A stretch of 64,000 nucleotides of DNA, from IMG/VR virus record IMGVR_UViG_3300042891_000711, positions 154,903 through 218,902 of that record; one strand, given 5' to 3'. The notes beneath the pieces were generated by a model, which saw only the letters and a program-made list of their open reading frames with translations, was not told where the DNA came from and did not search any database. Below, one piece after another: positions 2,373 to 60,694 of this stretch. The first letter of the stretch is position 1, and each line of letters opens with the position of its first letter. A program made the translations under genes and the position numbers.

Positions 2373-2379
2373 ATTAGTT

Positions 2380-2408
2380 ATTATACAACCATTTTTAATG
2401 TACGTCAA
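2380..2408 (-). promoter_or_regulatory. Sigma70-type promoter for the APS kinase / dCMP deaminase / GT-repeat genes (probably leaderless)
   Basis: Minus strand reads TTGACG-N17-TATAAT, then 7 nt to the ATG at 2372. Confidence 0.75.
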
Positions 2409-2437
2409 GTATTTAATATCATGTAGCTGCCCCAAAT

Positions 2438-2445
2438 AATAAATA
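2438..2445 (+). promoter_or_regulatory. T4-type late promoter (AATAAATA) for the sulfotransferase-like gene
   Basis: TAAATA core 5 nt upstream of ATG 2451. Confidence 0.55.
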
Positions 2446-2450
2446 CAAGC

Positions 2451-4521: not shown

Positions 4522-6008
4522 GATAAAACTCGAATTCCGTATAACTGCTCAAAGCGGTCAGCATCTGCACGATCGTTAACCATCGGTTCACCACGTACAT
4601 TTAAACTTGTATTAAGTAACATAGGACAACCTGTCCAAGTATACCACAAGCACAATAGTTCACGTATACCACTGCCATCTCTGGGCACAGTCTGTACACG
4701 ACTTGTACCATCTACATGTATTATAGCAGGAAATTCATCGGGTCGCAGGCACTTTGCAGTTGTTTGCATGTATCTGCTTGTGGCAAATCCGTTGGGCATT
4801 TCAAAATACTCATCAACAAACTCCTCTAGTATTATAGGAGCGAATGGTCTAAACTTCTGTCTACGTTTAATTTGATTAACTGCATCTTTAATGTCAGGGC
4901 CACGTGGGTCGGCTAATAAACTACGATTGCCCAATGCTCTAGGGCCAAACTCTGCACGGCCGCTAGCAACGCCAACGATCTTATTGGTCATTAGCTCAGA
5001 GACAACATCGGTGACAGGATAACTGCCACTAATATTATGGCCAAGAAAAGCATTATTCCAATTAAGTTTACCCCCGTGTGCCAATGCCGCCGCTCCAAGG
5101 CTGCTACCAGCATCACCAGGATTAGGCATAATCCATATTTCATCAAAGTATTCTCCTAGATCTCTATTAGCACTGCAATTAAGAGCAACTCCGCCAGCAT
5201 ATACTAAATTACTATTAGGTGCTAGCTTCTTTGCCTTGTACATAATATTATGTATCAATTGTTCTGTTAATGTCTGTGCCGCATTAGCAATTTCAAAATC
5301 ATTCCAACGAGCTCGCATGTCATTATCGGGTAGACCAATATGTAGATTGTGTTTTAATGTTAGATTAAACTCATGGTCAACTAACCAAGTTGACAGTTGA
5401 TCACTTAGACGTGTGGTATTTTGTTTTGCCCAACCTGCCATACCCATCAAGATGTATTCTTCATCTAGTGGTTTAAGTCCAACTTCTTTAGTAAATGCAC
5501 TGTACATCAAGCCGATGCTGTGTGGATATAGTTGTCGCCATACTCGGGTGTATTCAGCACGGCCATTGACATACTTAGCTGACCATATGCTTATGGTGTC
5601 CCACTCGCCGATGGCATCGATTACCACAACTGTTGCGCTGTCAAACGGGCTAGTTTGAAAGCCGGCCGCTGCATGACTTAAATGATGATTGTATGTATTA
5701 ATCGGAGTAGAACTCAACCACGGAGCGACTTTGTGTATCATGTTGCGCACACTCCAGCCTTTAGTTAGTTCGCTGTACTGGCCAGCATAGAGTTGACGTG
5801 TCTTTTTAACCCAGGGTCTTTCGTAGTAGGCAATTAGATCAGGTTCGCCATGATTAAATATGCAATCTTTAAACAGTTCACTGTTTAAATTTGGATCGTG
5901 TTTAATCTTGCTGTAACGTTCAGCATGGCCCGCAAAGACAATGTCATCGCCTTTGATTAATGTAATTGCTGCGTCATGAAACCCAGCCGAGATGCCTAAT
6001 ATGTTCAT
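4518..6008 (-). CDS. O-carbamoyltransferase (NodU/CmcH/TobZ family)
   Basis: GISAGFHDAA, ERYSKIKH, HHLSHAA, DAIGE, GGVALNC, GDAGSSLGAA, EFGPRALGNRS, RPFAP, HVDGTSRVQTV and LLNTSLNVRGEP. Confidence 0.95.
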   Translation of the reverse strand: MNILGISAGFHDAAITLIKGDDIVFAGHAERYSKIKHDPNLNSELFKDCIFNHGEPDLIAYYERPWVKKTRQLYAGQYSELTKGWSVRNMIHKVAPWLSSTPINTYNHHLSHAAAGFQTSPFDSATVVVIDAIGEWDTISIWSAKYVNGRAEYTRVWRQLYPHSIGLMYSAFTKEVGLKPLDEEYILMGMAGWAKQNTTRLSDQLSTWLVDHEFNLTLKHNLHIGLPDNDMRARWNDFEIANAAQTLTEQLIHNIMYKAKKLAPNSNLVYAGGVALNCSANRDLGEYFDEIWIMPNPGDAGSSLGAAALAHGGKLNWNNAFLGHNISGSYPVTDVVSELMTNKIVGVASGRAEFGPRALGNRSLLADPRGPDIKDAVNQIKRRQKFRPFAPIILEEFVDEYFEMPNGFATSRYMQTTAKCLRPDEFPAIIHVDGTSRVQTVPRDGSGIRELLCLWYTWTGCPMLLNTSLNVRGEPMVNDRADADRFEQLYGIRVLS

Positions 6009-6522
6009 TGATTACTTCCGCTATTCGTTGATGCCCTAGTTCCAGTGGATGTCCACCCGGTCCTTTTGGACAATCACCCATCCATTCTACTATGCCTTGG
6101 TTTGGCCAGCCTAGCCAACATGATAATCCTGTGTCAGTTGCTTGTTGTTGTATATCAAAGGTACTTACAAACACGTGTGGTATATTGTGTAAATAGGCAT
6201 CTAATAACTTAGTCTGTACTATAAATTTTTTATAAGCCCATGCAGTGTCCCAGTCAGCAAATACACTATTGACTACAGGACCATATTTTTTATAACTAGC
6301 CGATGTTAAATGTTTGCCAGGCAATTCAATACGGTTAGGACTAGTCCATGCTACGATTACATAATCAACTGAATGTGTGTCGACATAGTCAACTGTTGAT
6401 CTAAGTATGTAATCATTACTAGCACCAGGAACACTAATGTTTACAGTGCCACTGATTAAATCAGGCCATGCAACTTCGCTTTCTTCACCTGCGGTAAAAC
6501 TATCGCCATTGACTAAAATCAT
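5974..6522 (-). CDS. SGNH-fold protein
   Basis: NGDSFTAG, GASN, WTSPNR and GGHPLELGH. Confidence 0.7.
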   Translation of the reverse strand: MILVNGDSFTAGEESEVAWPDLISGTVNISVPGASNDYILRSTVDYVDTHSVDYVIVAWTSPNRIELPGKHLTSASYKKYGPVVNSVFADWDTAWAYKKFIVQTKLLDAYLHNIPHVFVSTFDIQQQATDTGLSCWLGWPNQGIVEWMGDCPKGPGGHPLELGHQRIAEVINEHIRHLGWVS

Positions 6523-6620
6523 TTATAGATAAAAGGATCGCGTTTACGTAATTCTTTTAATTTTTTACGATAGTTTATTTCTAATCGAATTCTACTGTAT
6601 AAATTCTTTAACCAGTTCAT
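6519..6620 (-). CDS. 33-aa basic peptide MNWLKNLYSRIRLEINYRKKLKELRKRDPFIYK
   Basis: Below the ORF-track cutoff. It bridges the gap between two SGNH genes, and its TGA overlaps the ATG of the next gene (ATGA at 6519-6522). Confidence 0.75.
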   Translation of the reverse strand: MNWLKNLYSRIRLEINYRKKLKELRKRDPFIYK

Positions 6621-7419
6621 GATAATTCTCCCGAATATATTTTGCAGCATCAATATGCGCAGGTTCCAACGGATGTGTTGTGCCTATAGGATATTTAAAG
6701 TCTCTTGCCCAGGTATAAAATCCTTGATTATTTGGGAAAGTAATCCAACGATCGAAGTCAATTTGATTGTATAATAATGCTATACTTTCATCATTCATTA
6801 GATGCATACAGTTATTTAATAGTGCTTCATCCACCATTGAAAATATATAGGGTATCTTTCTTAACTGTAGATATTGCTGTAACATAATTATTTCTGTCAG
6901 CGAATTATAAGTTTCCCAATACTGTTCTTTTGATGCACCGATGTGCTTATAAAATGTTTTGGCAAATTCAGTTACGCCTGAACGTTTTGCTCGATTTAAA
7001 TGTGTAACGTGATGTTCGAGTATATCAGGATCATCTGTTTTAAATTCGCGTTTAATATCTTCTATATCATCAATGATTGACCAAGAAGTAAGGTTGTACC
7101 AATTACCCCAACGTTCTTCTGTATCATAATTAAATCTAAATTCGTATCTACCAGGAAAGGTCCATGTCACAATCACTAATCCAACGTCTTGTAATTTTTC
7201 ACAGGCGTTCATCGTAGTCCGACGAATAGCACTGTTACTAAATCCGGGATATGCTGCACATTCATAGTGCATACCAAAGTTTTGGGCTAAGAGTGCCGGG
7301 TAAGTACTTAAACTGACTATCTGATGGGCAGGGTCAGGGTTAGTAGTATCTCTATGAGTAACACTATCGGTTAGTTCACTGCCATAAGTAAAACTATCAC
7401 CGCCTGATAGTAAAATCAT
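6592..7419 (-). CDS. SGNH-fold protein
   Basis: GGDSFTYG, GFSN, WTFPGR and THPLEPAH; paralog of 5974..6522. Confidence 0.7.
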   Translation of the reverse strand: MILLSGGDSFTYGSELTDSVTHRDTTNPDPAHQIVSLSTYPALLAQNFGMHYECAAYPGFSNSAIRRTTMNACEKLQDVGLVIVTWTFPGRYEFRFNYDTEERWGNWYNLTSWSIIDDIEDIKREFKTDDPDILEHHVTHLNRAKRSGVTEFAKTFYKHIGASKEQYWETYNSLTEIIMLQQYLQLRKIPYIFSMVDEALLNNCMHLMNDESIALLYNQIDFDRWITFPNNQGFYTWARDFKYPIGTTHPLEPAHIDAAKYIRENYHELVKEFIQ

Positions 7420-7420: not shown

Positions 7421-8506
7421 TTAGGATATCCTTAGGATCTGTTGATCTCGATAGTCACTGTCTGACCAATCGTATGTATAAGTTACAGTAGCACTACTAG
7501 TTCGTATGCTGTGTACATTTAAGTGTAGGCCGAGCTGTGCCCATATAACGTTATAGTCTGTTGATCCAAAACTTCTAATTAAATCAACTTGTCCGACCTG
7601 TGGGTGACCAATTGTTAATGTTTTATCTTCTGGATCGAATCCATTGTCAATTAACCATGTTCTAAACGCTTCAAGACTTCGTATTTGCCAATGATATTTG
7701 CCCGGGTCATTGGCCCATTCAATATCAAAGTCTCCGGCGGCTTCTGTTTGCGAACGCAATGTTGTAGTAGTCAATTCATCTATTCTATGCCCTGCTGCGC
7801 CTTCATCTCGAAATACTTCATAATGATGTTTGCCCACTGCTTTGTTGACTCCAGCGAATACACCACCCAGTGGTCGGTTTATGCTGTTAATTCCAAACAA
7901 TTCAAAATCATCTGCATCTAATACAAATCTTGGTGCATTTAACCAACACATTAGCTGACTTGGTCTTCGCCATTCTGGTGCGTGCGCGGCTTTGCGCATG
8001 CTCAACACCAGCGATTCGTATTCATGACATAATAAATTTAATTGTCGAATGTGCCATTTAGTTTGATTATCAGCACGGTTGTAATATTCTGTCATATGGC
8101 CGCTAGTGCCCTGCAGGTCTTCAAAATATCGATGCAATTGATTTAATTTATCATGTATAATCATACCACCTGGTAAATCATCACCTACCGGTCCGGGCAT
8201 TATTGTATTAGCCACTGTGAAATGATCATCAATTTGATAGCCAATATTAGCTTGATTAATTGCAGCAATTGACTGATTCATTTGATCAGTTATATACTCT
8301 GCATTACGTTCAGATTCGATAAAGCCGTGAAAACAATAATTCTTTTCTAAGTGATAGTTATTTTCTACTAGATGATTTAATGCTGATAACCATTTACGAC
8401 TAAGTGAGCTGTCAAATACATCAATGTATACAGTTAACAGTTCGTTGGTTTTATTGTTTTTTAAATCAATTTCAATTTGATCAAGCAATGTTGTTGTACC
8501 ATTCAT
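7421..8506 (-). CDS. Hypothetical protein in the radical SAM operon (His/Glu-rich helical motifs)
   Basis: 361-aa ORF coupled to both neighbours, with LNQLHRYFE and LNLLCHEYE motifs; no family recognised. Confidence 0.6.
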   Translation of the reverse strand: MNGTTTLLDQIEIDLKNNKTNELLTVYIDVFDSSLSRKWLSALNHLVENNYHLEKNYCFHGFIESERNAEYITDQMNQSIAAINQANIGYQIDDHFTVANTIMPGPVGDDLPGGMIIHDKLNQLHRYFEDLQGTSGHMTEYYNRADNQTKWHIRQLNLLCHEYESLVLSMRKAAHAPEWRRPSQLMCWLNAPRFVLDADDFELFGINSINRPLGGVFAGVNKAVGKHHYEVFRDEGAAGHRIDELTTTTLRSQTEAAGDFDIEWANDPGKYHWQIRSLEAFRTWLIDNGFDPEDKTLTIGHPQVGQVDLIRSFGSTDYNVIWAQLGLHLNVHSIRTSSATVTYTYDWSDSDYRDQQILRIS

Positions 8507-9770
8507 ATACAGCCGGTCTCTCTTTTAATATGTCTGCTAGCGTATAGGTATCTTTACGTATACTTTCTAATTGTAGCACACGAGCCTTACCTTTTGCAAG
8601 ACTTACTTTATATGTATCTGGCCATTGCTCATCAAACGTTGGTCGTGATTTTAACTGCACAAGTATATCCTGCATAGCACCAGAAGTTTGTGGTATTAGT
8701 TCATCTAGCCAAGGATGTAGTAAGTCGCGTGGTAGTGCCAGCGGACTAAGGATGATGTCAGGGCTAAAGCTAAAAATAACTTTAGCCAAGACATCTACGT
8801 TTTCTTTTTCAGCAAGCTGGGTAATGTTTGTGACTTCAAACATGCCGGGCAGTGTGAGAGTAAAGTCAATTCGCATTTGCCTTCTATGACTTGCTGTTCT
8901 AACTCCTTCACGGAAATTTGCAAGCCATGTATTGTAGTCAAGTCCTGTTCTAATATATTCTCCAATTCGACCAGTTCCGTCGAGGCTTGCACAGATTTGC
9001 CAGTCACGTAGCCCAGATAGAATATCCCTATAGAGATTGATGCCACGATAGTCGACGCGGCTAAGATTTGTATTGTATCTTGCGTAAACATTTTTACCAT
9101 ATCCTAGTTCAACAATGCGTTGCATATAACGCCAATGTTGTTCATACATCAAGGGTTCACCACCCACCCAATATACTTCTTCTACTTGATGATCTTCAAC
9201 TGCTTGAGCAAACTCCTGTTCAATTTGACTATCTTGAAATTTTGATATTTCATTTCTTACTTCGGGCCGCATCCAATTGTTCTTTGGATTATGCCAGTTA
9301 ATCATGTCATATTGTCTTTGTTCAGACTCCCATGCACTGCTTAACATATCACCACACATACGACATTTGAAATTGCATAAGTTACTAAAGCGATAATCCC
9401 AGCTTACAGGACGAAGTGTAGTAGTTCCGTCTGGTTGGGTATTCTCTAGTACTTGCAAATACTTATGGCCAAACAGACTATCAAAATAACTACGGTAAAT
9501 GCTAGTGTTAAGTAATTTGTCATTGCACACTTCGCACTCAGGTAGTGTTTCACCTGCCATCATACGGCGACGTACACTTTTCATGTGTTCGCTATTCCAA
9601 TGTTCTTCAAGTGTAATAGGAATATATGTGCCAGTACCAGCTTTAGTATCTATGTACTGTTCAAAGTTCTGTGCGGGCTCGCGACTAGCACAGCACATAC
9701 GTCGCTCAGTTTGCGGACTAAGATATGTATGTACCCACGGTGCTAGACAAAGTGTACTAGGCTTCGACAT
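8481..9770 (-). CDS. Radical SAM protein with N-terminal twitch (Fe-S) domain
   Basis: N-terminal CLAPW..RMCC..CEVC, core NLCNFKCRMC, GGEP and YNTN. Confidence 0.9.
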   Translation of the reverse strand: MSKPSTLCLAPWVHTYLSPQTERRMCCASREPAQNFEQYIDTKAGTGTYIPITLEEHWNSEHMKSVRRRMMAGETLPECEVCNDKLLNTSIYRSYFDSLFGHKYLQVLENTQPDGTTTLRPVSWDYRFSNLCNFKCRMCGDMLSSAWESEQRQYDMINWHNPKNNWMRPEVRNEISKFQDSQIEQEFAQAVEDHQVEEVYWVGGEPLMYEQHWRYMQRIVELGYGKNVYARYNTNLSRVDYRGINLYRDILSGLRDWQICASLDGTGRIGEYIRTGLDYNTWLANFREGVRTASHRRQMRIDFTLTLPGMFEVTNITQLAEKENVDVLAKVIFSFSPDIILSPLALPRDLLHPWLDELIPQTSGAMQDILVQLKSRPTFDEQWPDTYKVSLAKGKARVLQLESIRKDTYTLADILKERPAVYEWYNNIA

Positions 9771-12312
9771 AGCCCATTGCTACAGCAATCTCTCTATGAG
9801 TAGTTAACATACTCTGCTCACGGTATGCGTCTGTCTGTTGCATCTTATGTAGGAATTCTGTGCCATCACTACCACCACCATTTTCGATAAATTGAATTAT
9901 CTTATCAATTTCAACTCGATGCTTAACATTAAATGGATAAGCAGATAATCTATCAATTACTAACTTTTGTGCATCCGTTGTCATTCGATTGATACACATA
10001 ACACTCGGGTCATGCAACATATTAAAATGCACCATATCAAATTGTTGAGTATTAACCCAGTCACATAGCTCGGGCAGATAATAAACATTTTGTATGTTAA
10101 CGGTCATGCAAACCTGTGTCTGAATTAAATTAGTTTTCATGGCATTAAATTTTATAACATTAGTTTTTACTTCTTCCCACACAGCACCATAGCGTTCGTA
10201 TTCAAAACGTGCTTCGGTATTATCAATACTAACTGCAATTTCAACATTTCTAAATTTACTCCATAAGGCAACTTCTTCGTCGCTTGGGTATACTGTACCG
10301 TTAGTATTATAGTGTATATCAATACGTTTACTATATCCATGCTCAACTGCATAGCGTAATAGTTTAAAATGCTCTTCGATTAGGAATGGTTCGCCGCCTG
10401 TGAATTCAAAGTACTTAATGTTTGGTAATAGTTCTTTTAAATTTTCCCAAAATACTTCGCTTTCCCTCGGCCAGGTTCCTTCTTGTAGGAACATATATGC
10501 ACCGTGTTGTTTACGGTCATATCCCTGCACGTCTTTATATTTTCTAGCTTCGTAATCAATTTCTTCTTTAGCCCATTTACTGCTACTCCATGATCCGCAT
10601 ATACGACATTTAAGATTACAGATGTTGCCTAGTTTAAGATCAATGAACCAAAGTTGATCCGGTGTATCATTACGCCAATCAACTATTGGATAGAATTCTT
10701 TAAGTCTAATTCTGCTGTTGATACGTTTACTAACTATGCCCGCATCTTCTTCACTCCAGCAACGATTGCATGTACTAGGCTTTTCACCTCGACGGAATTG
10801 TTGGCGCAGGTCCTGCATGTATTCACTATTGTAAATTTCAGCCAAGGAGCTTTCTCTAAGTTTATACGGAGTACCATCGGGTTTAGTAATTTCATCTTTA
10901 GCCAGACAACACGGACGGGCTGTGCCGACTGGACTTGCTTCAATACTGACCCACGGCAACATACAGATATTATCATGTGTCTTATTGATTCCCAAATGGT
11001 CTCTCAACTCTTGATATTCTGGAAACACTTCTTCGAATGTTTCTTTTCTAAACTCATCGGTTTGATCATTTATCTTAAAAAATTCTTTTAATAAATGGCT
11101 CTTATCGTCTTGATACATAAATGTGATAATAGCTCGATAACCCGATATAGCTCGTTGTAAATGATCCTGTGGGTCAAGCCAAGCAATATGTTCTTCAACA
11201 CGTTGCTTAATTCTATCTTTAAACTGAATTGGTAATACATCGATTCGATCACGTTCTGGACTTTGTAGAATGTTAACATTCCAATCCATTGCTTTAATTA
11301 AGCCAAGTTCAACCCATTCTTTATGAAATTCAGTTAAATGCCAAGCATTAAGTATACTAACTGTACTGCTGACATAAAAGTCAACTTTAGGACAAATTTC
11401 AATCATTTTGCGTCGATTTTCTACTGTTTCTGCCCAGTCTGTGCCCTTGCGGATGTATTCTCCGCGAAGATATGAATCATCTAAACTAGCACCCACACTT
11501 ACTACATCAAACAGTTTCCAATATTCAAATACCATCTTATCTTTAAGACGTATGTGACTGAAGTTTGTGTTGTAGATTAACCTAACATGGAACATTTCAC
11601 GCTTAACCAGTTCTTCTAATATGCGATAATGTTCTTCCATGATTAATGGCTCGCCGCCGGCAAAGTAAATCTGTTCTAGATAGGGAATGTGTTCCTGCAT
11701 CTGTTCCCACATGTCATCTTTATTTTTACCTGCAAACATAATCTGCGGATGATTTAATTTACCGAATAGTTTAGTTTCTTCTGCAAACCAACTACTGCTG
11801 AATAAACTACCACAAGTACGGCAACTAAAGTTACATAGATTACTAAAACGTACATCATAGTAGCGTAGTTTAAAGTCATCTAAACTACCGTCGGCATTAG
11901 TTTTATCTGCTAAGGCAATATGATGTCCAAAGTTCTTATTTTGACTGTTGCGCATCGAAAAGAATCCGTTGTCTTCTTGTTCGTAACAACGTGTACATTC
12001 TTTACTGGGTTTATCCTCTAACATATTTAGACGCATCTGTTTGTATGGGGTTCCATTCCATACTTCTGCCATGGTATTCTCTTTGAAGTTACCAATCGGC
12101 AAATGCATTTCACCTAAACAACATGGATATGCACGACCATCGGGAATTCCATGCATGTGCGTCCATGGTATCATACAGAAGTGCTTGCTTTCTATTAGTT
12201 TATATGTTTGATCTTCTGTTAACTCATCTTCATGTATATACACAGGTTTACGTGTATTGTAATTGTGATTTTTATGATGTACAGTTAATTTTTTGCTTGG
12301 CTCATCGCTCAT
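9757..12312 (-). CDS. Tandem double twitch-radical SAM protein (two complete modules)
   Basis: Module 1: CMIPW..PCC..CTRC + CNFSCRTC + GGEP. Module 2: CMLPW..PCC..CNRC + CNLKCRIC + GGEP. Confidence 0.9.
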   Translation of the reverse strand: MSDEPSKKLTVHHKNHNYNTRKPVYIHEDELTEDQTYKLIESKHFCMIPWTHMHGIPDGRAYPCCLGEMHLPIGNFKENTMAEVWNGTPYKQMRLNMLEDKPSKECTRCYEQEDNGFFSMRNSQNKNFGHHIALADKTNADGSLDDFKLRYYDVRFSNLCNFSCRTCGSLFSSSWFAEETKLFGKLNHPQIMFAGKNKDDMWEQMQEHIPYLEQIYFAGGEPLIMEEHYRILEELVKREMFHVRLIYNTNFSHIRLKDKMVFEYWKLFDVVSVGASLDDSYLRGEYIRKGTDWAETVENRRKMIEICPKVDFYVSSTVSILNAWHLTEFHKEWVELGLIKAMDWNVNILQSPERDRIDVLPIQFKDRIKQRVEEHIAWLDPQDHLQRAISGYRAIITFMYQDDKSHLLKEFFKINDQTDEFRKETFEEVFPEYQELRDHLGINKTHDNICMLPWVSIEASPVGTARPCCLAKDEITKPDGTPYKLRESSLAEIYNSEYMQDLRQQFRRGEKPSTCNRCWSEEDAGIVSKRINSRIRLKEFYPIVDWRNDTPDQLWFIDLKLGNICNLKCRICGSWSSSKWAKEEIDYEARKYKDVQGYDRKQHGAYMFLQEGTWPRESEVFWENLKELLPNIKYFEFTGGEPFLIEEHFKLLRYAVEHGYSKRIDIHYNTNGTVYPSDEEVALWSKFRNVEIAVSIDNTEARFEYERYGAVWEEVKTNVIKFNAMKTNLIQTQVCMTVNIQNVYYLPELCDWVNTQQFDMVHFNMLHDPSVMCINRMTTDAQKLVIDRLSAYPFNVKHRVEIDKIIQFIENGGGSDGTEFLHKMQQTDAYREQSMLTTHREIAVAMGYVEA

Positions 12313-13661
12313 AAGGTGTCGTACCAGTTAGTTAATTGTGTAAATGTATATTTAAAGTCTTTGCCTCGACGTTGGTCGTATTGCTGATAAAATTGTTTAA
12401 AATCGTTTTGTAATTTAGGCAAATCAAATGCTTCAGCATGCGGAATATCTACCATGGTCAAATATTCAATTAGTCGTTTAATGTGCTCAAATTCGTGCTC
12501 ATGAAATACTGTATTCTTATTATTGTTAGCTAAAAAAGTTTCAAGTTCTAAACTATATTTTTTACGTAGTTCTAAGGGTAATATTAAAGGGCTTTGGAAA
12601 CTTGGAAAGCGCAGAATATTTAGAGTAAACGACAATGAATCACGTCCGTATTTCTCTTTGAGTTTCATTATATTGTACAAAAATTCACTGAGGCTTGATA
12701 AACACAGGGCATTGATTGTGCCCATGATATGCACGCCGCGCACCTGTTTGGATTCTAATAGAAATACTAAATTTTTGACCCATTGTTTCCATTCTAATCC
12801 ATCACGTATATACTCTGCTTGTGCGCCCATAGCTTCGTTACTGGTGTAGATATCAAGTTCGATACCCTGTGTGCTATCCAGCAAGCGTTCGAGTACATCA
12901 CGTTTAAAGCCAAGATTACTATTGATAGCTAGGCGTGTAGTACTGGCACCTTTATGTTCTTTAAACCAATCTATTAGACGCCATGTATAACCCGACATCA
13001 AGGGTTCACCACCTGTGATGCGCAGTTCTTTTAACGTCTTGTGTAGGTCTGTTTCCCACCACTTAAAGAACGCTTCCACATAAGGATTAACTTCATTGAG
13101 TGTGTAAAGTTGACTACTATCATGAACATGAGTAAAGTGATTCCTACCGTCTGATACCAAGTTTGTGTAAGCACCATTTGTTTTAATATCTCTGACCCAG
13201 GCGCTACTAAAAGCAGGATTGCAGTAACTACAAGCAAATTGACAAGTACGGTCAAAAGAAATTTCCAATGTCTGCAGATCCACGTCTTGGTCCGCGGGTA
13301 AATTATATGCATAATCTAAATCCTCATCTTTATAAATTACAGTTTTGTACACACGGTCACTGACTGCCGCTGTGCCCATGTCTTCAATCTTCCAGCAGTA
13401 TTCACAGCCCGCGGGTCGTTCACCTTGTTGCATCATACGACGTTCTTCTTTCTTACGTATGCTGTTGTGCAGGGCTTTGGGATTAGCAGCAATATCCTCA
13501 AGTGACACTTTGTGCGGTAGTGGATGATGACAGCTAGTAGTCATACCCGAACCCAACCATATAGTAGCATTGTACCACTTGGCCGCACAGAATGATTCTG
13601 ACTTAATGTCAATTACTCTACGCTTGTATTCTAAGTCTGTTTCGTTATTAATTTTCGGCAT
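12309..13661 (-). CDS. Radical SAM protein with N-terminal twitch domain (SCHHP subtype)
   Basis: CAAKW..SCHHP..CEYC, core CQFACSYC and GGEP. Confidence 0.9.
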   Translation of the reverse strand: MPKINNETDLEYKRRVIDIKSESFCAAKWYNATIWLGSGMTTSCHHPLPHKVSLEDIAANPKALHNSIRKKEERRMMQQGERPAGCEYCWKIEDMGTAAVSDRVYKTVIYKDEDLDYAYNLPADQDVDLQTLEISFDRTCQFACSYCNPAFSSAWVRDIKTNGAYTNLVSDGRNHFTHVHDSSQLYTLNEVNPYVEAFFKWWETDLHKTLKELRITGGEPLMSGYTWRLIDWFKEHKGASTTRLAINSNLGFKRDVLERLLDSTQGIELDIYTSNEAMGAQAEYIRDGLEWKQWVKNLVFLLESKQVRGVHIMGTINALCLSSLSEFLYNIMKLKEKYGRDSLSFTLNILRFPSFQSPLILPLELRKKYSLELETFLANNNKNTVFHEHEFEHIKRLIEYLTMVDIPHAEAFDLPKLQNDFKQFYQQYDQRRGKDFKYTFTQLTNWYDTL

Positions 13662-15045
13662 GATATTTGCATTCGTTCCAAAATTCTCGCATCTGTGGGA
13701 ATATGTCTGTAAAATGTCCTATGTCAGTTTCGTATGCGCCGCGACGTTTATCGTATTCGCTAAAGAATCGATAGAAGTCCGCACGTTGTAGTGTAACATA
13801 CTTTGCATCTAACTTGCTACCATCTCGCATCCAAAGTAAGTTGCGTTCCATACGCTGTATTTCATAATCTTTAAAGCCAACAAAACTATCGTTGGGCATT
13901 AGGTTAGCCCGCATAAATGCTATAACATCTTCTAATACTGTCTGGTAACTTGCTGGAAGTATCTGTAAACTTTGCCAAGTTGGACTACGTAGTAAAGGTG
14001 TATCAAACCAAACACGTTGATAAGTTTCGCTATACAATTCACGTTGATCTAATACAGTCTGCAATAATTGTTTTAGTCCTAAAATATTTAAATTACTCAT
14101 CGTGATGATATAGGTTAGGCTATTGCGATAAGGTATATGTGTAAGATAACGATGTACATATGAATTTACTCTATGTTGATTTAAACCACGACGAATATAC
14201 TCCGACTGTCTGGTGTCACCCGAATCTAAACTAACATACTGCATAAAGTGTTCGATGCGTTCACCTTCGCATAGCTGTTTTACTTTGTCTAGATACTTGT
14301 CAAACAGTTCAGGCTCGACACTAAAGTTACTGGTTACATCAACGTGCAAGTCACTCTTAGGCAAGGCAAGTATGTAGTCAAACACACGATGCGTATTCTT
14401 ATCCATAAGTGGTTCGCCACCTGTCATACGGAAGTGTTTTAGTTTAGGATATAGTTCAGGCCACCAAGACCAAAATGCATCTACATAAGGATTTTCTGCA
14501 CGTACTGGAATTGGCTTACGTCGACCTTCAAAATGTTCAGGCGCATTGTGCGGAGTACTAGTTGGATATGCTCCCCATCGGTCAATATCTGTACCCCACT
14601 TAGTACTGTACTGCGGACTGCAATAGCTACATGCCAAATTACAGCCATGACTGAAGTTTACTTCTACATAACTTGGCGTAACGTCCTGATCCCAAGGTGC
14701 ATTAACTATAGTTTCGTAGTGTTCAGCAGCCCATGGTTCGCCACTGCGATAATGCCTATCGCTTAGTTGCTGGTTATCTTCTGCACTCCAACAGTAGCTG
14801 CATTCTGCCGGACGTGTTTGCTCTAGCATAAGTTTACGTTGCTGTTTCTTATAGTCAGTATTGTGTAAGGCACTGGGATTGAATAGTAATGGTGCGCTAT
14901 CAATTTCATGTAAAGGCGGATGATAACAACTGTTAGTTAAGCCCGTTGGTAAATGTAGACTTACCTGTTGCCACTTAGCCAAGCAGAGTGCCGGACCTAA
15001 CTTGTCCTTCATTTCTTCTGCGGCAGACATGAAATTACTACTCAC
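13648..15045 (-). CDS. Radical SAM protein with N-terminal twitch domain (SCYHP subtype)
   Basis: CLAKW..SCYHP..CSYC, core CNLACSYC and GGEP. The start is probably GTG 15045 (overlapping the upstream stop) or ATG 15030. Confidence 0.88.
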   Translation of the reverse strand: MSSNFMSAAEEMKDKLGPALCLAKWQQVSLHLPTGLTNSCYHPPLHEIDSAPLLFNPSALHNTDYKKQQRKLMLEQTRPAECSYCWSAEDNQQLSDRHYRSGEPWAAEHYETIVNAPWDQDVTPSYVEVNFSHGCNLACSYCSPQYSTKWGTDIDRWGAYPTSTPHNAPEHFEGRRKPIPVRAENPYVDAFWSWWPELYPKLKHFRMTGGEPLMDKNTHRVFDYILALPKSDLHVDVTSNFSVEPELFDKYLDKVKQLCEGERIEHFMQYVSLDSGDTRQSEYIRRGLNQHRVNSYVHRYLTHIPYRNSLTYIITMSNLNILGLKQLLQTVLDQRELYSETYQRVWFDTPLLRSPTWQSLQILPASYQTVLEDVIAFMRANLMPNDSFVGFKDYEIQRMERNLLWMRDGSKLDAKYVTLQRADFYRFFSEYDKRRGAYETDIGHFTDIFPQMREFWNECKYHAEN

Positions 15046-15934
15046 GTGACATTGGGCCTCGGTTTTTAAACACACTTTTGTAGTGATGTTTAAAGAATCT
15101 ACTTTGATCAGCTGTGAAATGTGGAGCAGGTAATCCTAGTTTTACGCTTAATGTATGTGACATTTCACTACATTCTTCTACTAGATTATATACTTTATGT
15201 TGATGCCATATATTGTTTAGTGCATCGAAGTCCTGCACTTCTCTATAATCCCAATCTGTAATCATAGTCATGTATGTGCCTAGTTTAGCACCGTACATGG
15301 CCCAGTCACCGTTCTCTACATCTATGCCCACATTGTGCCATATGCTTAGATGATCATAGTTACGTTCGTGTACACGTTTTTCAAATTCTTGTAGTGTAGG
15401 TTTGGCACCACGATCCAAACACATCTTAACACCTTCTCTAAAGCCAGCTCGCCATGCTTGATAAGGACTTTGATTTGGATATGTTGTGCTGTAGCAATCA
15501 TTCATTGCCCAATATCGTGGATCAAAACAAAACTCAACTGCGGTATCATCTGCACCATCGCTGGCTTCGTGTGTACGCATATTGTTTACAAAATCCTTGG
15601 TCCAGCAACTCATACCACCATTGCCGTACATAAGTCCGTTGATAATGTTACGTGCTTTCCAACGGAATACTACATCTCGATTAGTATCATCCAGTGTAAG
15701 CTGTAGGTTAAAGAACTCTGGATCGGGTAAGTTATCACCATCTATTAATACAAAGCGTTCAGTATCACTTGCGGCGGCCGCGGCTTTATGTGCAGCATCA
15801 CTGCCCTTGACACCGTCTACTCGTTTAGCCCACGGCACCATGTTTTGAATTTTAATCCAAAACTCTTCTTTTTTAGGTTCATCGTAACTTAGGTAGATGC
15901 AGTCTAAATCTGCAATATCAACGATTTGTGTCAT
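15038..15934 (-). CDS. Glycosyltransferase-like protein (GT-A fold)
   Basis: DCIYLSYDEP...AHKAAA...FVLIDGDN (DxD), YGNGG and WRAGFREGVK. Confidence 0.6.
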   Translation of the reverse strand: MTQIVDIADLDCIYLSYDEPKKEEFWIKIQNMVPWAKRVDGVKGSDAAHKAAAAASDTERFVLIDGDNLPDPEFFNLQLTLDDTNRDVVFRWKARNIINGLMYGNGGMSCWTKDFVNNMRTHEASDGADDTAVEFCFDPRYWAMNDCYSTTYPNQSPYQAWRAGFREGVKMCLDRGAKPTLQEFEKRVHERNYDHLSIWHNVGIDVENGDWAMYGAKLGTYMTMITDWDYREVQDFDALNNIWHQHKVYNLVEECSEMSHTLSVKLGLPAPHFTADQSRFFKHHYKSVFKNRGPMSRE

Positions 15935-16268
15935 AGTATTCTATATCCTGGTAGGTGTCAGTTGATTCTATTATTAGTCCTGCATGTTTCTTTACAGTAG
16001 CGTAGCCTGTGATACTACTAGTTAATTGTACACGATAACCCGGGTTGTTGTCAATCTTTTTTAGACGGCAGTCTACAATTGTATAGCGGAAATAATTCTC
16101 ATATTCATCTTGACTAACAACAACATACTGCGTATCTGCTGGGTGGTTCATCATTGTACACATTGTAATGATTCCAAGTTCATTGTAGTGTAATCTATAT
16201 TCTTTAACTTCTTCTACAGTAGGTTTGAGCATTGCCAATGCTTTTTCAAATTCACTTAAAGAGTTCAT
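15918..16268 (-). CDS. Hypothetical protein
   Basis: ~116-aa ORF overlapping both neighbours in the operon. Confidence 0.6.
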   Translation of the reverse strand: MNSLSEFEKALAMLKPTVEEVKEYRLHYNELGIITMCTMMNHPADTQYVVVSQDEYENYFRYTIVDCRLKKIDNNPGYRVQLTSSITGYATVKKHAGLIIESTDTYQDIEYYDTNR

Positions 16269-17109
16269 GTTCATACTCCTTGACTAATTGATCCGTTACC
16301 CAAGACTTTTCATGATAGTGAACGGGGTGATATTGATTGGTGTTTGCTATGCGTATCATTGGCAGTTCTGTTTCACACATGACTAACTCGGGCCAGGGTG
16401 TACTAGTCCATGCATTAATTGCTGGCTTCATATGCACAAAATTAATAAAGTCTAGGCTAGGTAGTGTACAATCTTCTACACCAAGTAACTTTGCAGCTAG
16501 AGCATAGACAACATCAGTAGTGGGATTATCATCACGGCAGTTAAGTAATACATTGTCACGTATGTAGGCCCAATTTTTAAATATTTGTTCTGCTAAGGCA
16601 AAGAATTGCGTAGCTTCACGACTGTATCTAAAATACATTAGCCCATTGTAGGTATCGGGCAATTCATTATCGTCAAATAACTTTCTGTATTCTCGTGATA
16701 CGCTTAACTCCTGCTGATAGTTTCTACAGCCGGTGCTTAGTACAACATTTTTTAATCTAAAAGCAGTCCACCAATGTGCAATACTTCTAGTGAATACAAT
16801 GTCACTTTCAAGTTTAATTGTTTCTTTGAATGGAGTGAGATAAAATGCCTGCCATTCATTTGATAACTTCCATGTTTCGTTTTCAGCTAGGTCATTCTCA
16901 ATAGTAACAACATAATCAAACACCCGTCGATGTTGTTCTGTTATCTGTTCAAGTGTATGTTTATCAACTGCTACTGCGTATAAACTATCAGGCATGGTCA
17001 GTTTAATACTCATTGCTTGCACGTAAGCAAGCTGTAAGTAATCAACCTCTGTGGTATTCTGCGCAATGGTCATAAAACCCTGCTGTGCTTGATGTGGTGT
17101 TATGCGCAT
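16252..17109 (-). CDS. Nucleotide-diphospho-sugar transferase-like protein (GT-A; ESD in place of DxD)
   Basis: TPFKETIKLESD, YNGLMYF, TTDVVYALA and FVHMK; paralog of 17100..17876. Confidence 0.6.
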   Translation of the reverse strand: MRITPHQAQQGFMTIAQNTTEVDYLQLAYVQAMSIKLTMPDSLYAVAVDKHTLEQITEQHRRVFDYVVTIENDLAENETWKLSNEWQAFYLTPFKETIKLESDIVFTRSIAHWWTAFRLKNVVLSTGCRNYQQELSVSREYRKLFDDNELPDTYNGLMYFRYSREATQFFALAEQIFKNWAYIRDNVLLNCRDDNPTTDVVYALAAKLLGVEDCTLPSLDFINFVHMKPAINAWTSTPWPELVMCETELPMIRIANTNQYHPVHYHEKSWVTDQLVKEYEHELFK

Positions 17110-17876
17110 ACTGTATCTACCAACTGATTAAAATTTTCACTAAGCAAATAATCTTTATCCATCACGTGTATGTTTTGCAGGGCAATGACATGTGCAGAAT
17201 TTTCTTCGCGTATAATCATCTTTTCGCCCGTTATTTCAATGTTTTTAATTAGTTTATCCAGGGTTAACATAGTCCAAGGTATACTTTGTGTGGTGTTAGT
17301 AGTGTACCCATTAATGATGTTGTTAGCAATAGCAAACGCATAATCATTGCGGAAATTACGTTCTCTTAAGTGATATAGTTTTTGATAGTAAGCATAGTTA
17401 CGTTCAATACGACCAACTAAATCAAATAACATTTGTGTTTTATCTGTACGCTTAAATGTTATAGCAGTTGCCCATACATAATCTAAACTTAACTGACCCA
17501 TGTTGCCCGACATTGACTGTTCAGGGCTTTGATTATTGTGCATTAACTTATAATCAACTGTTGTATCAAGTATAGTTAATAAACTTGAGTCTAACTGTAG
17601 ATAGTCACTGTCAAGTAAGATAGTTTCGTCATAAGGGCTAAGTTCGTATGCACGATATCTACCACCATTCTTCCATTCTGTACCACCAGCATAGCCAGTG
17701 CGATAGTTAGCTAAACTAGGTACGCCCAGATCTGTGATAATGGTAGTAGGTAAGTTTAATGTATGTTTTATTAGTCGTGCGGCTTGCTCAGCGATTCTAA
17801 CATAATCAACTGTGGCAGTGTTAACAGCAAATAGTACAACACCTTTAGACTTTGCGGGCACGTCGAATTTCTTCAT
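17100..17876 (-). CDS. Nucleotide-diphospho-sugar transferase-like protein (GT-A)
   Basis: SPYDETILLDSDY (DxD), WATAITF, FRNDYAFAIA and HVMDK. Confidence 0.65.
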   Translation of the reverse strand: MKKFDVPAKSKGVVLFAVNTATVDYVRIAEQAARLIKHTLNLPTTIITDLGVPSLANYRTGYAGGTEWKNGGRYRAYELSPYDETILLDSDYLQLDSSLLTILDTTVDYKLMHNNQSPEQSMSGNMGQLSLDYVWATAITFKRTDKTQMLFDLVGRIERNYAYYQKLYHLRERNFRNDYAFAIANNIINGYTTNTTQSIPWTMLTLDKLIKNIEITGEKMIIREENSAHVIALQNIHVMDKDYLLSENFNQLVDTVCA

Positions 17877-18162
17877 ATTGAATATGCCATGCGTTCATTA
17901 CTTGTTGATAGTGTTGCTGACACAATTCTAAAAATGCTAGTCGTTGTATTTCTATAGGATTTTCGTAGGTATCTTCAAGATATAGTGTATCAGCAGTCCA
18001 AGTTGATAGGAATGCTATAAGTTCCGGTGTTACTTTAAAGAGTCCATTGTTATACGGAACATGTAAGTCCGTTTGTATTTTTTCTTTAAGTATGCGTTTG
18101 TTGGTTTGATAATCCGTTGCTTGTTTAATTTGAGCAACTAGTTGAGTAATTTCTGTTGTCAT
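17845..18162 (-). CDS. Hypothetical protein, first gene of the modification operon (possible tail-fibre-assembly-like fold)
   Basis: The start MTTEIT at 18162 lies downstream of the promoter/terminator junction. The helical protein contains YNNGLFKVTPELIAF...LEDTYENPIEI. Confidence 0.55.
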   Translation of the reverse strand: MTTEITQLVAQIKQATDYQTNKRILKEKIQTDLHVPYNNGLFKVTPELIAFLSTWTADTLYLEDTYENPIEIQRLAFLELCQQHYQQVMNAWHIQYEEIRRARKV

Positions 18163-18178
18163 AATAGTAATTAGCCAT

Positions 18179-18209
18179 AAAAATAGGTAAGTCAAAATAA
18201 CTTACCTAT
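18179..18209 (-). terminator. Intrinsic terminator after the last tail-fibre gene
   Basis: Perfect 10-bp inverted repeat ATAGGTAAGT (18183-92) / ACTTACCTAT (18200-09), followed by a T run on the minus strand. Confidence 0.7.
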
Positions 18210-18238
18210 AGTATAAGACATTTGTATTAAGTTGTCAA
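18210..18238 (-). promoter_or_regulatory. Consensus sigma70 promoter driving the GT/radical SAM operon
   Basis: Minus strand reads TTGACA (18238-33) - N17 - TATACT (18215-10). Confidence 0.8.
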
Positions 18239-57999: not shown

Positions 58000-58057
58000 G
58001 GTTTTATTTCCTATAAATATAATTGATATACTGTATATTTATAGGTTAAAACCATGG
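57996..58057. promoter_or_regulatory. Palindromic pair of opposing TATAAATA late promoters
   Basis: TATAAATA on + at 58012-19 and on - at 58036-43, embedded in 12-bp and 11-bp perfect inverted repeats. Confidence 0.8.
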
Positions 58058-60686: not shown

Positions 60687-60694
60687 TATAAATA
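60687..60694 (+). promoter_or_regulatory. T4 late promoter TATAAATA for the portal gene
   Basis: Exact consensus 25 nt upstream of the portal ATG. Confidence 0.8.

What the first reader, a model, noticed from the sequence alone, without database searches (positions are those of the whole stretch)
8481..15045. Five permuted (N-terminal twitch) radical SAM modules in tandem, in two subtypes, one as a fused dimer
In characterised SPASM/twitch enzymes the auxiliary Fe-S domain is C-terminal. Here all five modules have it N-terminal, a known but functionally uncharacterised architecture. Three modules have C..PW/CC/CxxC and two have C.AKW/SC(H/Y)HP/CxxC. The 851-aa protein fuses two complete modules, implying sequential or heterodimeric action. 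This is a heavy Fe-S and SAM investment for a phage and suggests stepwise radical chemistry on one substrate.
Basis: partly seen in the sequence, partly recalled or inferred. Interest (0 to 1): 0.7.

Follow-up and report, generated by a model that had tools for sequence, protein, structure and literature searches.

The report
Phage radical-SAM array in a sugar-tailoring operon
A lake-water T4-like giant phage carries five complete radical-SAM enzyme modules of an uncharacterised "auxiliary iron-sulfur domain first" family, conserved in fixed order beside sugar-transfer and sugar-decorating genes next to its tail-fibre genes, which points to unexplored radical chemistry on a glycan.

Summary
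Four minus-strand genes (8481-15075) encode five complete modules of NCBIfam NF033640 (N_Twi_rSAM), at 274-717 bits against a cut-off of 170. Each module keeps four N-terminal Cys, CxxxCxxC and GGE. The four N-terminal Cys align with the C-terminal twitch Cys of BtrN, so the domain order is truly reversed. The two subtypes form a supported split in a tree.

The 851-aa fusion is real. Contigs from three independent lake samples bridge the junction without a difference. It is derived: closer relatives have it, and more distant relatives have two overlapping genes. Two- and three-module fusions recur across the family.

The array is the best-conserved core of a roughly 14.5-kb block of soluble proteins. 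The block holds a GT-A glycosyltransferase, two further DxD proteins, a NodU-like carbamoyltransferase, SGNH-like proteins and an APS kinase. About 30 uncultured phage contigs share it, always just after the tail-fibre genes.

Elsewhere the family is fused to GT2 domains and sits among glycosyltransferases and sugar-nucleotide enzymes. It is sporadic in bacteria (3 of 301 genomes sampled). No characterised or solved relative was found.

Best reading: stepwise radical tailoring of a glycan. The substrate and acceptor are unproven. The whole 219-kb record holds eight such modules and twelve radical-SAM domains.

The parts
8481..9770 (-). rS1: single N-terminal-twitch radical SAM module (429 aa), subtype C..PW/CC/CxxC
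   Evidence: NF033640 at 290 bits. Motifs. Orthologues are 73-91% identical in most related loci, 58% in L032 and 44-45% in the most distant loci L036/L038/L040.
10993..12312 (-). rS2N: first module (residues 1-440) of the 851-aa fused protein
   Evidence: NF033640 at 394 bits. AlphaFold2 model pLDDT 94.3, pTM 0.91. It is a separate 435-452-aa gene in L009, L024-L033 and L035.
9757..10992 (-). rS2C: second module (residues 441-851) of the fused protein
   Evidence: NF033640 at 335 bits. It is a separate 392-415-aa gene in more distant relatives.
10972..11019 (-). Fusion junction: a short linker (..LGINKTH..) between the last helix of module 1 and the first twitch Cys of module 2
   Evidence: Unfused relatives overlap stop and start by 1-17 nt. 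Contigs from three independent lake-water runs bridge the junction with 0 differences and 0 gaps (X2 record 2, X3 record 20, X5 record 27).
12309..13661 (-). rS3: single module (450 aa), subtype C.AKW/SCHHP/CxxC
   Evidence: NF033640 at 294 bits. More than 8000 database proteins match at E<=1e-5, the tool's candidate cap, and all 120 listed are 70-96% identical.
13648..15075 (-). rS4: single module (475 aa from GTG 15075; more likely 465 aa from 15045), subtype C.AKW/SCYHP/CxxC
   Evidence: NF033640 at 274 bits. Orthologue lengths are 461-470 aa.
15038..15934 (-). GT298: GT-A-fold glycosyltransferase, always directly upstream of the radical SAM array
   Evidence: No Pfam, PHROG or PDB sequence hit. 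Model pLDDT 82. Foldseek top hits are ThuS/SunS and PBCV-1 A64R, probability 0.96-1.0. VIA-align Z 9.7 over residues 8-153 to GT-A enzymes. D65 and D67 are invariant in 18 orthologues.
15918..16274 (-). unk118: small conserved protein of unknown function
   Evidence: Syntenic in most relatives. No family hit.
16252..17876 (-). GT285 and GT258: two candidate GT-A glycosyltransferases (DxD-like motifs ESD, DSD)
   Evidence: Motifs read. The only family support is a weak Mannosyl_trans3 hit, E 0.031. Syntenic in relatives. Assignment is tentative.
17845..18195 (-). unk116: first gene of the island (probably 104 aa from an internal ATG)
   Evidence: Relatives are 103-105 aa. No family hit.
18183..18238 (-). 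Sigma-70-like promoter (TTGACA-17-TATACT) followed at once by a hairpin and T-run, between the tail-fibre gene and the island
   Evidence: 11 of 12 consensus match, 12-bp hairpin. The same layout, with different sequences, occurs in seven relatives.
7421..8506 (-). unk361: conserved protein of unknown function, always directly after rS1
   Evidence: Syntenic in the loci that carry the five-module form of the block and reach that far; no match in L034 or L036-L040. No Pfam, PHROG, NCBIfam, PDB-profile or Atlas hit. Conserved columns are listed.
5974..7419 (-). SGNH275 and SGNH182: two proteins that begin with a GDS.T motif (SGNH/GDSL-like)
   Evidence: Motif. Weak DUF6071 hit. GDSL proteins also flank the family in two Bacteroidota loci. 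Tentative.
4518..6008 (-). NodU/CmcH-type carbamoyltransferase, the conserved end of the core block
   Evidence: Carbam_trans_N at 132 bits and Carbam_trans_C at 162 bits. NodU is the closest NCBIfam model. Present in relatives, including the most distant ones.
1938..4521 (.). Accessory tailoring genes: SGNH-like 282 aa (3673-4521, -), 413-aa protein with a sulfotransferase-like N-terminal motif (2451-3692, +), APS-kinase-like P-loop protein (1938-2435, -)
   Evidence: APS_kinase at 45 bits against a cut-off of 21. The 413-aa protein has no family hit, and it is present only in L012 and L022. SGNH282 is found in L012, L022 and L029.

Best explanation
The five modules are catalytically complete members of the uncharacterised N-terminal-twitch radical SAM family. 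They form the conserved core of a soluble operon that builds and tailors a glycan.

Shown: each module has the SAM-cluster motif, the GGE SAM-binding motif and a four-Cys twitch domain placed before the core. Each of the five is a separate, strongly conserved orthologue kept in fixed order. The array is always flanked by a GT-A glycosyltransferase upstream and a sugar-type carbamoyltransferase downstream. The family elsewhere is fused to, or interleaved with, glycosyltransferases and sugar-nucleotide enzymes.

Inferred: each module reductively cleaves SAM. The 5'-deoxyadenosyl radical abstracts a hydrogen from a sugar carbon. The twitch [4Fe-4S] cluster takes or returns the electron, as in the twitch enzyme BtrN. 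The result would be an oxidation, epimerisation, deoxygenation or cross-link. Each paralogue would do a different step or act on a different sugar, between or after glycosyl transfers. Carbamoylation, (de)acylation and possibly sulfation would then follow.

None of the island's proteins has a membrane segment, and the island sits directly after the tail-fibre genes. The acceptor is therefore most likely cytoplasmic, and virion (tail-fibre) proteins are the leading candidate. The rS2N-rS2C fusion replaced translationally coupled genes and suggests that the two act consecutively or as a pair.
For: Family membership and intact motifs. Reversed domain order and Cys-for-Cys alignment with BtrN's twitch. 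High-confidence fold.

The order GT298-rS4-rS3-rS2N-rS2C-rS1-unk361 is conserved in L009, L012-L033 and L035. CarbT lies downstream wherever the locus reaches that far. The most distant relatives keep GT298, then 8-10 radical SAM genes, then CarbT. Orthologues are 55-96% identical, against 16-31% between paralogues.

A relative has UDP-glucose dehydrogenase and an NAD-epimerase/dehydratase inserted next to the array. GT298 has a GT-A fold with an invariant DxD. Carbamoyltransferase of the NodU type.

Fusions elsewhere: the family is joined to Glycos_transf_2 in two different arrangements. Other contexts: GT2 genes alternating with radical SAM genes; a GT with UDP-glucose dehydrogenase; PMT_2, GT2, GT1, DegT aminotransferase and a transketolase-type pair; a methyltransferase-GT2 fusion, a GT22-like protein and a GDSL protein.

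No hydrophobic 19-residue window above 1.6 in any island protein. The family is sporadic, so not housekeeping. The fusion is verified in independent samples, and the unfused genes overlap.
Against: No substrate is identified and nothing was assayed. Sequence-level support for GT285, GT258, the SGNH-like proteins and the sulfotransferase-like protein is weak or absent.

Three of the eight unrelated contexts show no glycosyltransferase: L049, L056 and L057. A fourth, in Bacteroidota, pairs the family with 2OG oxygenases, a halogenase and a secreted fibre-like protein. That context would also fit protein or small-molecule targets.

Most characterised SPASM/twitch enzymes modify peptides. GT298's best Foldseek matches are peptide S-glycosyltransferases, so the radical SAM enzymes could act on the protein rather than the sugar.

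The conserved sigma-70-like promoter before the island suggests transcription apart from the late tail-fibre genes. That weakens the link to virion assembly. The three other copies in the genome lie next to unrelated genes such as UvdE and ClpP.
Confidence: 0.45

Rival explanations
1. The radical SAM modules modify protein side chains or backbone (cross-links, epimerisation, C-H functionalisation) of phage structural proteins such as the adjacent Ser/Thr/Gly-rich tail-fibre proteins, or of a small conserved protein of the island. The glycosyltransferases then decorate the same protein, giving a RiPP-like or glycocin-like logic applied to a virion protein.
For: SPASM/twitch enzymes are mostly peptide maturases (established knowledge). 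The nearest solved cores include SkfB, CteB, anSME and SuiB. GT298's best Foldseek hits are the glycocin S-glycosyltransferases ThuS/SunS and the capsid-glycosylating A64R. The island is always next to tail-fibre genes. One Bacteroidota locus pairs the family with a secreted fibre-like protein carrying Peptidase_S74. One family member is fused to a Peptidase_S8 fragment.
Against: No peptide-recognition (PqqD/RRE) domain appears among the Pfam hits. No conserved short precursor-like ORF lies in the intergenic space. The tail-fibre proteins contain no Cys. The direct fusions are to GT2 and GNAT domains, and the recurring neighbours are sugar-nucleotide enzymes.
Confidence: 0.2
2. The island makes modified nucleotide sugars or glycans that are fed into the host's envelope (LPS, capsule, S-layer glycan) during infection. 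This would change the cell surface and block superinfection, as proposed for glycosyltransferases in the hypervariable tail-fibre region of pelagimyophages.
For: [quoted passage not shown] The sigma-70-like promoter suggests expression independent of late genes. Sugar-nucleotide enzymes occur in relatives and elsewhere in this genome.
Against: The island has no membrane protein, flippase, polymerase or lipid-carrier transferase. The block is conserved in order over wide divergence rather than hypervariable.
Confidence: 0.15
3. The island hypermodifies phage DNA: a glycosyl, carbamoyl or other group is built on a base by the glycosyltransferases and radical SAM enzymes, to evade restriction.
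For: T4-like phages glycosylate DNA using early genes. Radical SAM enzymes take part in thymidine hypermodification in other phages (established knowledge: Lee et al., PNAS 2018). The block ends beside a small P-loop kinase and a dCMP deaminase. It has a probable early-type promoter.
Against: The only thymidylate-synthase-family gene in the 219 kb held is a canonical ThyA, above the equivalog cut-off. No hydroxymethylase was found. GT298 has a GT-A fold and most resembles protein and polysaccharide transferases. The family's bacterial contexts are glycan clusters. About 38% of the genome is missing by CheckV's estimate, so a hydroxymethylase cannot be excluded.
Confidence: 0.08
4. The island makes a diffusible small molecule, such as an aminoglycoside-, nucleoside- or oligosaccharide-type natural product, during infection.
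For: The closest mechanistic analogue, BtrN, works in aminoglycoside biosynthesis, and carbamoyltransferases of this type (TobZ, NodU) decorate such compounds (established knowledge). Bacterial arrays sit with B12-radical SAM enzymes, 2OG oxygenases and a halogenase, as in natural-product clusters. A cyanophage paper reports 'antibiotic synthesis genes', including a radical SAM maturase.
Against: There is no transporter, no scaffold-forming enzyme (cyclitol synthase, NRPS or PKS) and no resistance gene in the island. The position next to the tail fibres is fixed across relatives.
Confidence: 0.1

Closest known systems
NCBIfam NF033640 N_Twi_rSAM (twitch domain-containing radical SAM protein)
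   Same: All five modules exceed the curated cut-off over the full model length. Same domain order, same four twitch Cys, same CxxxCxxC and GGE.
   Different: The family has no assigned function. What is specific here is the fixed five-orthologue array, a two-module fusion, and a phage operon with a GT-A enzyme and a carbamoyltransferase.
BtrN (2-deoxy-scyllo-inosamine dehydrogenase, the founding twitch radical SAM enzyme; PDB 4M7T)
   Same: The four auxiliary-cluster Cys of BtrN align with the four invariant N-terminal Cys of the family. The substrate is a sugar-like molecule. There is one auxiliary [4Fe-4S] cluster rather than the two of SPASM enzymes.
   Different: BtrN's twitch domain is C-terminal, and here it is N-terminal. 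Overall similarity is weak (E 1.2e-5 for the profile). The modules are about 170 residues longer and have a helical C-terminal region of their own.
SPASM peptide maturases (anSME, SkfB, CteB, SuiB, AlbA, MftC)
   Same: Best structural matches of the radical SAM core. Pfam SPASM matches the N-terminal domain.
   Different: TM by query is at most 0.38. Only the first half of the SPASM Cys pattern is present. The domain order is reversed. No peptide-recognition domain appears among the Pfam hits, and no precursor-like short ORF lies between the island's genes.
Viperin and prokaryotic viperins (nucleotide dehydratases)
   Same: Weak sequence and fold similarity of the core (47 bits to viperin_w_prok). 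They act on the sugar of a nucleotide.
   Different: Far below the family cut-off of 180 bits. Viperins have no auxiliary cluster domain.
Radical SAM cassettes in the tail-fibre hypervariable region of pelagimyophages (PMC7029224)
   Same: T4-like aquatic phages with a giant structural protein, then tail fibres, glycosyltransferases and radical SAM genes (window ORF 24394-37506).
   Different: That paper mentions the cassettes only in passing and gives no family assignment. The present lineage is from lake water and probably much larger (contigs up to 337 kb). Here the block is conserved, not variable.

Membership tests
NF033640 N_Twi_rSAM | Score above the curated whole-protein cut-off (170 bits) over the full model | tested here: met
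   290, 717 (two stretches), 294 and 274 bits. Per module: 394, 335, 294, 290 and 274 bits.
NF033640 N_Twi_rSAM | Twitch (half-SPASM) Cys-rich domain placed N-terminal to the radical SAM core | tested here: met
   Pfam SPASM at residues 46-110 and again before the second core. The alignment to BtrN's twitch shows the reversed order.
Radical SAM superfamily | CxxxCxxC cluster motif and GGE SAM-binding motif intact | tested here: met
   Invariant in all eight modules of the genome and in 75 family members.
Radical SAM superfamily | Binds [4Fe-4S] and reductively cleaves SAM | not testable with these tools
   Needs anaerobic reconstitution, EPR and detection of 5'-deoxyadenosine.
Canonical SPASM/twitch enzymes (BtrN, anSME type) | Auxiliary-cluster domain C-terminal to the core | tested here: not met
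   The domain is N-terminal in all five modules.
SPASM (two auxiliary clusters) | Seven-Cys motif including the second CxxCxxxxxCxxxC half | tested here: not met
   Only four conserved Cys lie outside the SAM motif. This is a twitch-type domain, not full SPASM.
RiPP radical SAM maturases | Peptide-recognition (PqqD/RRE) domain and an adjacent short precursor gene | tested here: inconclusive
   No such Pfam domain among the hits. No conserved intergenic short ORF. Structure-based RRE detection was not done.
Viperin family | Score above the NF038283 cut-off (180 bits) | tested here: not met
   At most 47 bits.
GT-A glycosyltransferases (for the partner GT298) | Rossmann-like GT-A fold with a DxD metal/nucleotide-sugar motif | tested here: met
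   Z 9.7 over residues 8-153. Foldseek probability 0.96-1.0 to GT2-type enzymes. D65 and D67 invariant. No Pfam GT family is matched.
NodU/CmcH carbamoyltransferases (for the partner at 4518-6008) | Both Carbam_trans_N and Carbam_trans_C domains above the gathering scores | tested here: met
   132 and 162 bits.

The most novel reading that the evidence does not exclude
Arrays of N-terminal-twitch radical SAM enzymes are a so far unrecognised class of glycan-tailoring catalysts. They would work module by module alongside glycosyltransferases to install radical-derived modifications (keto, epimerised, deoxy or cross-linked sugars). In this widespread lineage of lake phages the product would be a heavily tailored glycan on the tail fibres or other virion proteins. 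That would be the first radical-SAM-dependent virion glycosylation pathway.
Probability: 0.22. Interest if true: 0.85.

Novelty: new variant of a known kind. Interest (0 to 1): 0.62.

Why it matters
The family is large: about 7,400 clusters at 50% identity reach E<=1e-30. It has no characterised member, no solved structure and no assigned substrate.

This phage lineage offers a compact and strongly conserved genetic context. It has five distinct orthologues in fixed order, one GT-A enzyme and one carbamoyltransferase, all soluble. That makes the family's chemistry directly testable by co-expression.

If the glycan reading holds, it adds radical C-H chemistry to the known ways of diversifying glycans. 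It would also show that abundant freshwater phages invest up to a dozen Fe-S enzymes in it, possibly to decorate their receptor-binding apparatus. If the target proves to be protein or DNA, that would be equally new for this family.

Tried and rejected
- **Phage collection, DNA:** megablast of the region found nothing.
- **Phage collection, protein:** tblastn found only 22-26% identical hits in Vibrio and Ralstonia jumbo phages, annotated as hypothetical or 'moaA/nifB/pqqE family'.
- **Neighbours:** PHROGs gave no hit for ten neighbours and NCBIfam none for eight of them.
- **GT298 and unk361:** the Atlas found only unnamed viral clusters for GT298 and nothing for unk361. PDB profile searches for both gave nothing meaningful.
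- **Locus scans:** the eight-module alignment was too diverse for a locus scan. Relatives cannot be drawn for a virus record. One protein look-up (from L036) was not on record.
- **Complex prediction of rS2N with rS2C:** no verdict (score 0.00). This is no evidence either way.
- **Cyanophage idea:** no psbA in the record. The runs that hold the window are lake-water metagenomes.
- **Phage-encoded reductant:** no Fer2 or flavodoxin in the 219 kb.
- **T4 late promoter TATAAATA:** none in the island, and only four in the window.
- **Sigma-70-like sites overall:** not enriched over shuffles. Only the conserved intergenic one is used as evidence.
- **Literature:** searches for the family name, an N-terminal twitch, or radical SAM with glycans in phages found no characterisation. 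Two candidate papers, on amoC-phages and moraphages, concern other lineages.
- **PDB 8VPO:** the best sequence hit is a cyclopropyl-synthase RiPP enzyme that matches only the core.
- **Metatranscriptome:** contigs at 90-95% likeness cover parts of rS2-rS4. DNA carry-over cannot be excluded, so transcription is not claimed.

Full report
**What is there.** The minus strand of window 8481-15075 carries four tightly packed or overlapping ORFs of 429, 851, 450 and 475 aa. All four exceed the curated cut-off (170 bits) of NCBIfam NF033640, 'twitch domain-containing radical SAM protein' (N_Twi_rSAM). The scores are 290, 717, 294 and 274 bits. The 851-aa protein matches twice over the full model, and a six-frame search scores the five modules at 394, 335, 294, 290 and 274 bits. 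Pfam places its SPASM model (the Cys-rich auxiliary-cluster domain) before the Radical_SAM core.

**Are the modules complete, and is the architecture really permuted?** I aligned the eight modules of this genome. The invariant columns are four N-terminal Cys (C46, C64, C106, C109 in rS2N numbering), the CxxxCxxC motif, GGE, an NTN/SxD pair and an EY.R motif. The same columns hold in 75 family members.

A profile of the family matches BtrN, the founding twitch enzyme, in two pieces. BtrN's CxxxCxxC aligns with profile positions 105-150. BtrN's C-terminal twitch region aligns with profile positions 21-90, and its four Cys fall on the four invariant N-terminal Cys. From published work on BtrN, which I recall and did not test here, those four Cys ligate its auxiliary [4Fe-4S] cluster. 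The domain order is therefore reversed relative to BtrN, and a fully Cys-ligated auxiliary cluster is the natural inference.

The first module folds with high confidence (pLDDT 94.3, pTM 0.91). Full-length structural matches (TM up to 0.84) exist only among unnamed AlphaFold DB proteins. One of them is labelled 'Twitch domain-containing radical SAM protein'. Solved structures and reviewed proteins match only the core, at TM 0.38 or below: SkfB, viperin, CteB, anSME, MoaA, AlbA and MftC.

**Subtypes and age.** The motifs are as described:
- C..PW / CC / CxxC in rS1, rS2N and rS2C.
- C.AKW / SC(H/Y)HP / CxxC in rS3 and rS4.

Paralogues share only 16-31% identity. Each has orthologues at 55-96% identity in related phages. 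In a tree of 142 modules each orthologue group is a supported clade. rS3, rS4 and a sixth copy from elsewhere in the genome lie together on one side of a branch with 100% local support. These are old, individually maintained enzymes and not recent duplicates.

**The fusion.** Eight distinct viral contigs at 77-100% identity carry the fused 837-857-aa form. More distant relatives (46-70% identity to the two modules) carry two genes of about 440 and 400 aa. In those relatives the stop and start codons overlap by 1-17 nt, a sign of translational coupling. In the fused clade a short linker replaces the overlap.

Contigs from three independent lake-water runs bridge the junction with no difference or gap. 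The fusion is therefore not an assembly error. It is also not unusual for the family. Among the best 150 representatives of a library-wide profile search, many are two-module proteins of about 800-900 aa and some have three modules. A complex prediction for the two halves returned no verdict, so physical pairing rests on gene fusion alone.

**Where it sits.** The window is the last 64 kb of a 218.9-kb IMG/VR record that CheckV rates 62% complete. It is a T4-like myovirus, with a baseplate wedge and hub, a portal, a gp46-like nuclease and a 4370-aa ORF. Twenty-three lake-water metagenome runs hold the region, and related contigs reach 337 kb.

About 30 viral contigs share this conserved block, in this order:
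1. Tail-fibre genes.
2. unk116, GT258, GT285, unk118, GT298.
3. rS4, rS3, rS2N, rS2C, rS1.
4. unk361, two SGNH-like genes, the carbamoyltransferase.
5. An APS-kinase-like gene, dCMP deaminase and a repeat protein.

The most distant relatives keep GT298, then 8-10 tandem radical SAM genes, then the carbamoyltransferase. That trio is the core. The radical SAM genes and GT298 are the best-conserved proteins of the block.

**What the partners are.**
- **GT298** has no sequence-family hit. Its model (pLDDT 82) is a GT-A fold. VIA-align gives Z 9.7 over residues 8-153 against GT2-type enzymes. The Foldseek top hits are ThuS/SunS peptide S-glycosyltransferases and the chlorovirus capsid glycosyltransferase A64R. 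Its DxD motif is invariant.
- **The 496-aa protein** has both carbamoyltransferase domains, and NodU is its closest named model.
- **The P-loop protein** passes the APS_kinase threshold.
- **GT285 and GT258** (DxD-like motifs; one weak Mannosyl_trans3 hit), the three GDS.T-motif proteins and the sulfotransferase-like 413-aa protein are tentative assignments.
- **unk361** remains entirely dark.
- **Membrane segments:** no island protein has a 19-residue hydrophobic window above 1.6, so no membrane step is encoded.

**Independent context for the family.** One relative has UDP-glucose dehydrogenase and an NAD-epimerase/dehydratase inserted beside the array. Family members elsewhere are fused to Glycos_transf_2 at either end, to a GNAT domain and to a subtilase fragment. 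The neighbourhoods examined were:
- A 22-kb stretch with nine radical SAM genes interleaved with five GT2 genes.
- A GT fusion next to UDP-glucose dehydrogenase.
- A three-module protein among PMT_2, GT2, GT1, a DegT aminotransferase and a transketolase-type pair.
- A Bacteroidota chromosome with four adjacent copies, a methyltransferase-GT2 fusion, a GT22-like protein and a GDSL protein.
- A Bacteriovoracaceae array of seven radical SAM genes with no recognisable glycosyltransferase.
- A Bacteroidota locus with five 2OG oxygenase/halogenase genes, a B12-radical SAM gene and a secreted fibre-like protein.
- Two uninformative contexts.

The family is sporadic. Three of 301 evenly sampled genomes of one phylum have it, and none of 14 model genomes do. 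Where present it usually occurs as adjacent copies.

**Most likely mechanism.** The evidence best fits a pathway in which glycosyltransferases build a glycan and each radical SAM paralogue performs one C-H-initiated step on a sugar. The twitch cluster would act as the electron relay, as in BtrN. Carbamoylation, (de)acylation and possibly sulfation would follow.

The shown steps are family membership, intact motifs, the permutation, conserved order, the GT-A and carbamoyltransferase partners, and the glycan-type contexts. The reaction type, the substrate and the acceptor are inferred. A cytoplasmic acceptor is favoured because no membrane component is present. The tail-fibre proteins next door are the obvious candidate. 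I put this reading at about 0.45.

**Rivals.**
- **Protein modification** fits the habits of SPASM/twitch enzymes and GT298's nearest folds, but it lacks a recognition domain or a precursor.
- **Host-envelope remodelling** was proposed for similar regions of pelagimyophages but lacks membrane machinery.
- **DNA hypermodification** is suggested by the neighbouring dCMP deaminase and small kinase and by a probable early promoter. However, the only thymidylate-synthase-family gene is a canonical ThyA and no hydroxymethylase was found in the part held.
- **A small-molecule product** cannot be excluded.

**Transcription.** The 43-nt gap between the last tail-fibre gene and unk116 holds TTGACA-17-TATACT, followed at once by a 12-bp hairpin and a T-run. 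Seven relatives have the same layout with different sequences. I infer that the hairpin ends tail-fibre transcripts and that the promoter starts the island inside the hairpin's first arm. The T4 late motif TATAAATA is absent from the island but lies before the portal gene. The island therefore seems to be its own unit, possibly not late. This is mild evidence against a purely virion-assembly role.

**Verdict.** The enzymes belong to a known but uncharacterised family. The conserved phage operon around them has not been described beyond a passing mention of radical SAM cassettes in related marine phages.

Noticed in passing
Outside the window: G000:C1 29921-31186, 39433-40749, 52998-54140 (loci L008, L006, L007): Three further N_Twi_rSAM genes (205-256 bits) lie scattered elsewhere in the same phage record. 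They sit next to UvdE, a UDP-glucose dehydrogenase-like gene and ClpP. The record holds eight modules in all.
   Followed up: partly
window 54436-55557 (+); also G000:C1 23829-24986, 130696-132738, 139241-140773: Four more radical SAM proteins of other kinds: a 373-aa MoaA/tungsten-cofactor-maturase-like protein inside the window, a 385-aa protein with C-terminal Cys clusters, and two B12-binding radical SAM methyltransferase-like proteins (one KedN5-like). That makes 12 Radical_SAM domains in 219 kb. No ferredoxin or flavodoxin was found.
   Followed up: partly
window 18183-18238 (-): A near-consensus sigma-70 promoter is followed at once by a hairpin and T-run between the tail-fibre genes and the island. 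The layout is conserved in seven relatives although the sequence is not. It may be an overlapping terminator-promoter insulator.
   Followed up: partly
window 3-1526 (-), continuing to G000:C1:153810: An 872-aa protein has three to four repeats of about 55 aa (W.P.P..PPYIY.FP...GGPEY.VPGAT). Its C-terminal domain is 28% identical to the GT-A domain of GT298, but the DxD motif is replaced. It has no family hit.
   Followed up: partly
window 2451-3692 (+): This is the only plus-strand gene in the island. It has an N-terminal motif resembling the PAPS-binding loop of sulfotransferases but no family hit. It is present in only two relatives, L012 and L022. It appears to be a recent insertion beside the APS-kinase-like gene.
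   Followed up: partly
window 24394-37506 (-): A 4370-aa ORF lies between the baseplate genes and the tail-fibre genes. Its position recalls the giant VrlC-type structural protein described upstream of the hypervariable region in pelagimyophages.
   Followed up: no
window 58012-58043 and 60687-60694: The T4 late-promoter motif TATAAATA occurs only four times in 64 kb, fewer than shuffles give. Three of the four lie just upstream of structural genes, including the portal.
   Followed up: no
L066 (G081:C2:1209000-1228000): A Bacteroidota chromosomal locus holds two N_Twi_rSAM genes, five PhyH/WelO5-type 2OG oxygenase or halogenase genes, a methyltransferase, a B12-radical SAM gene, a GDSL protein and a T9SS-secreted protein with a Peptidase_S74 fibre-chaperone domain. 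It is a cluster of C-H-functionalising enzymes beside a fibre-like protein.
   Followed up: partly
window 9757-15075: The phage is widespread in lake-water metagenomes: 23 DNA runs hold 28-97% of the sampled words. One lake metatranscriptome has contigs at 90-95% likeness over parts of rS2-rS4. These may be transcripts of related phages or carried-over DNA.
   Followed up: partly
window 1938-2435 and 17845-18195: The mechanical ORF starts (TTG) are probably too far upstream. Relatives suggest about 133-141 aa for the APS-kinase-like protein and about 104 aa for unk116.
   Followed up: partly
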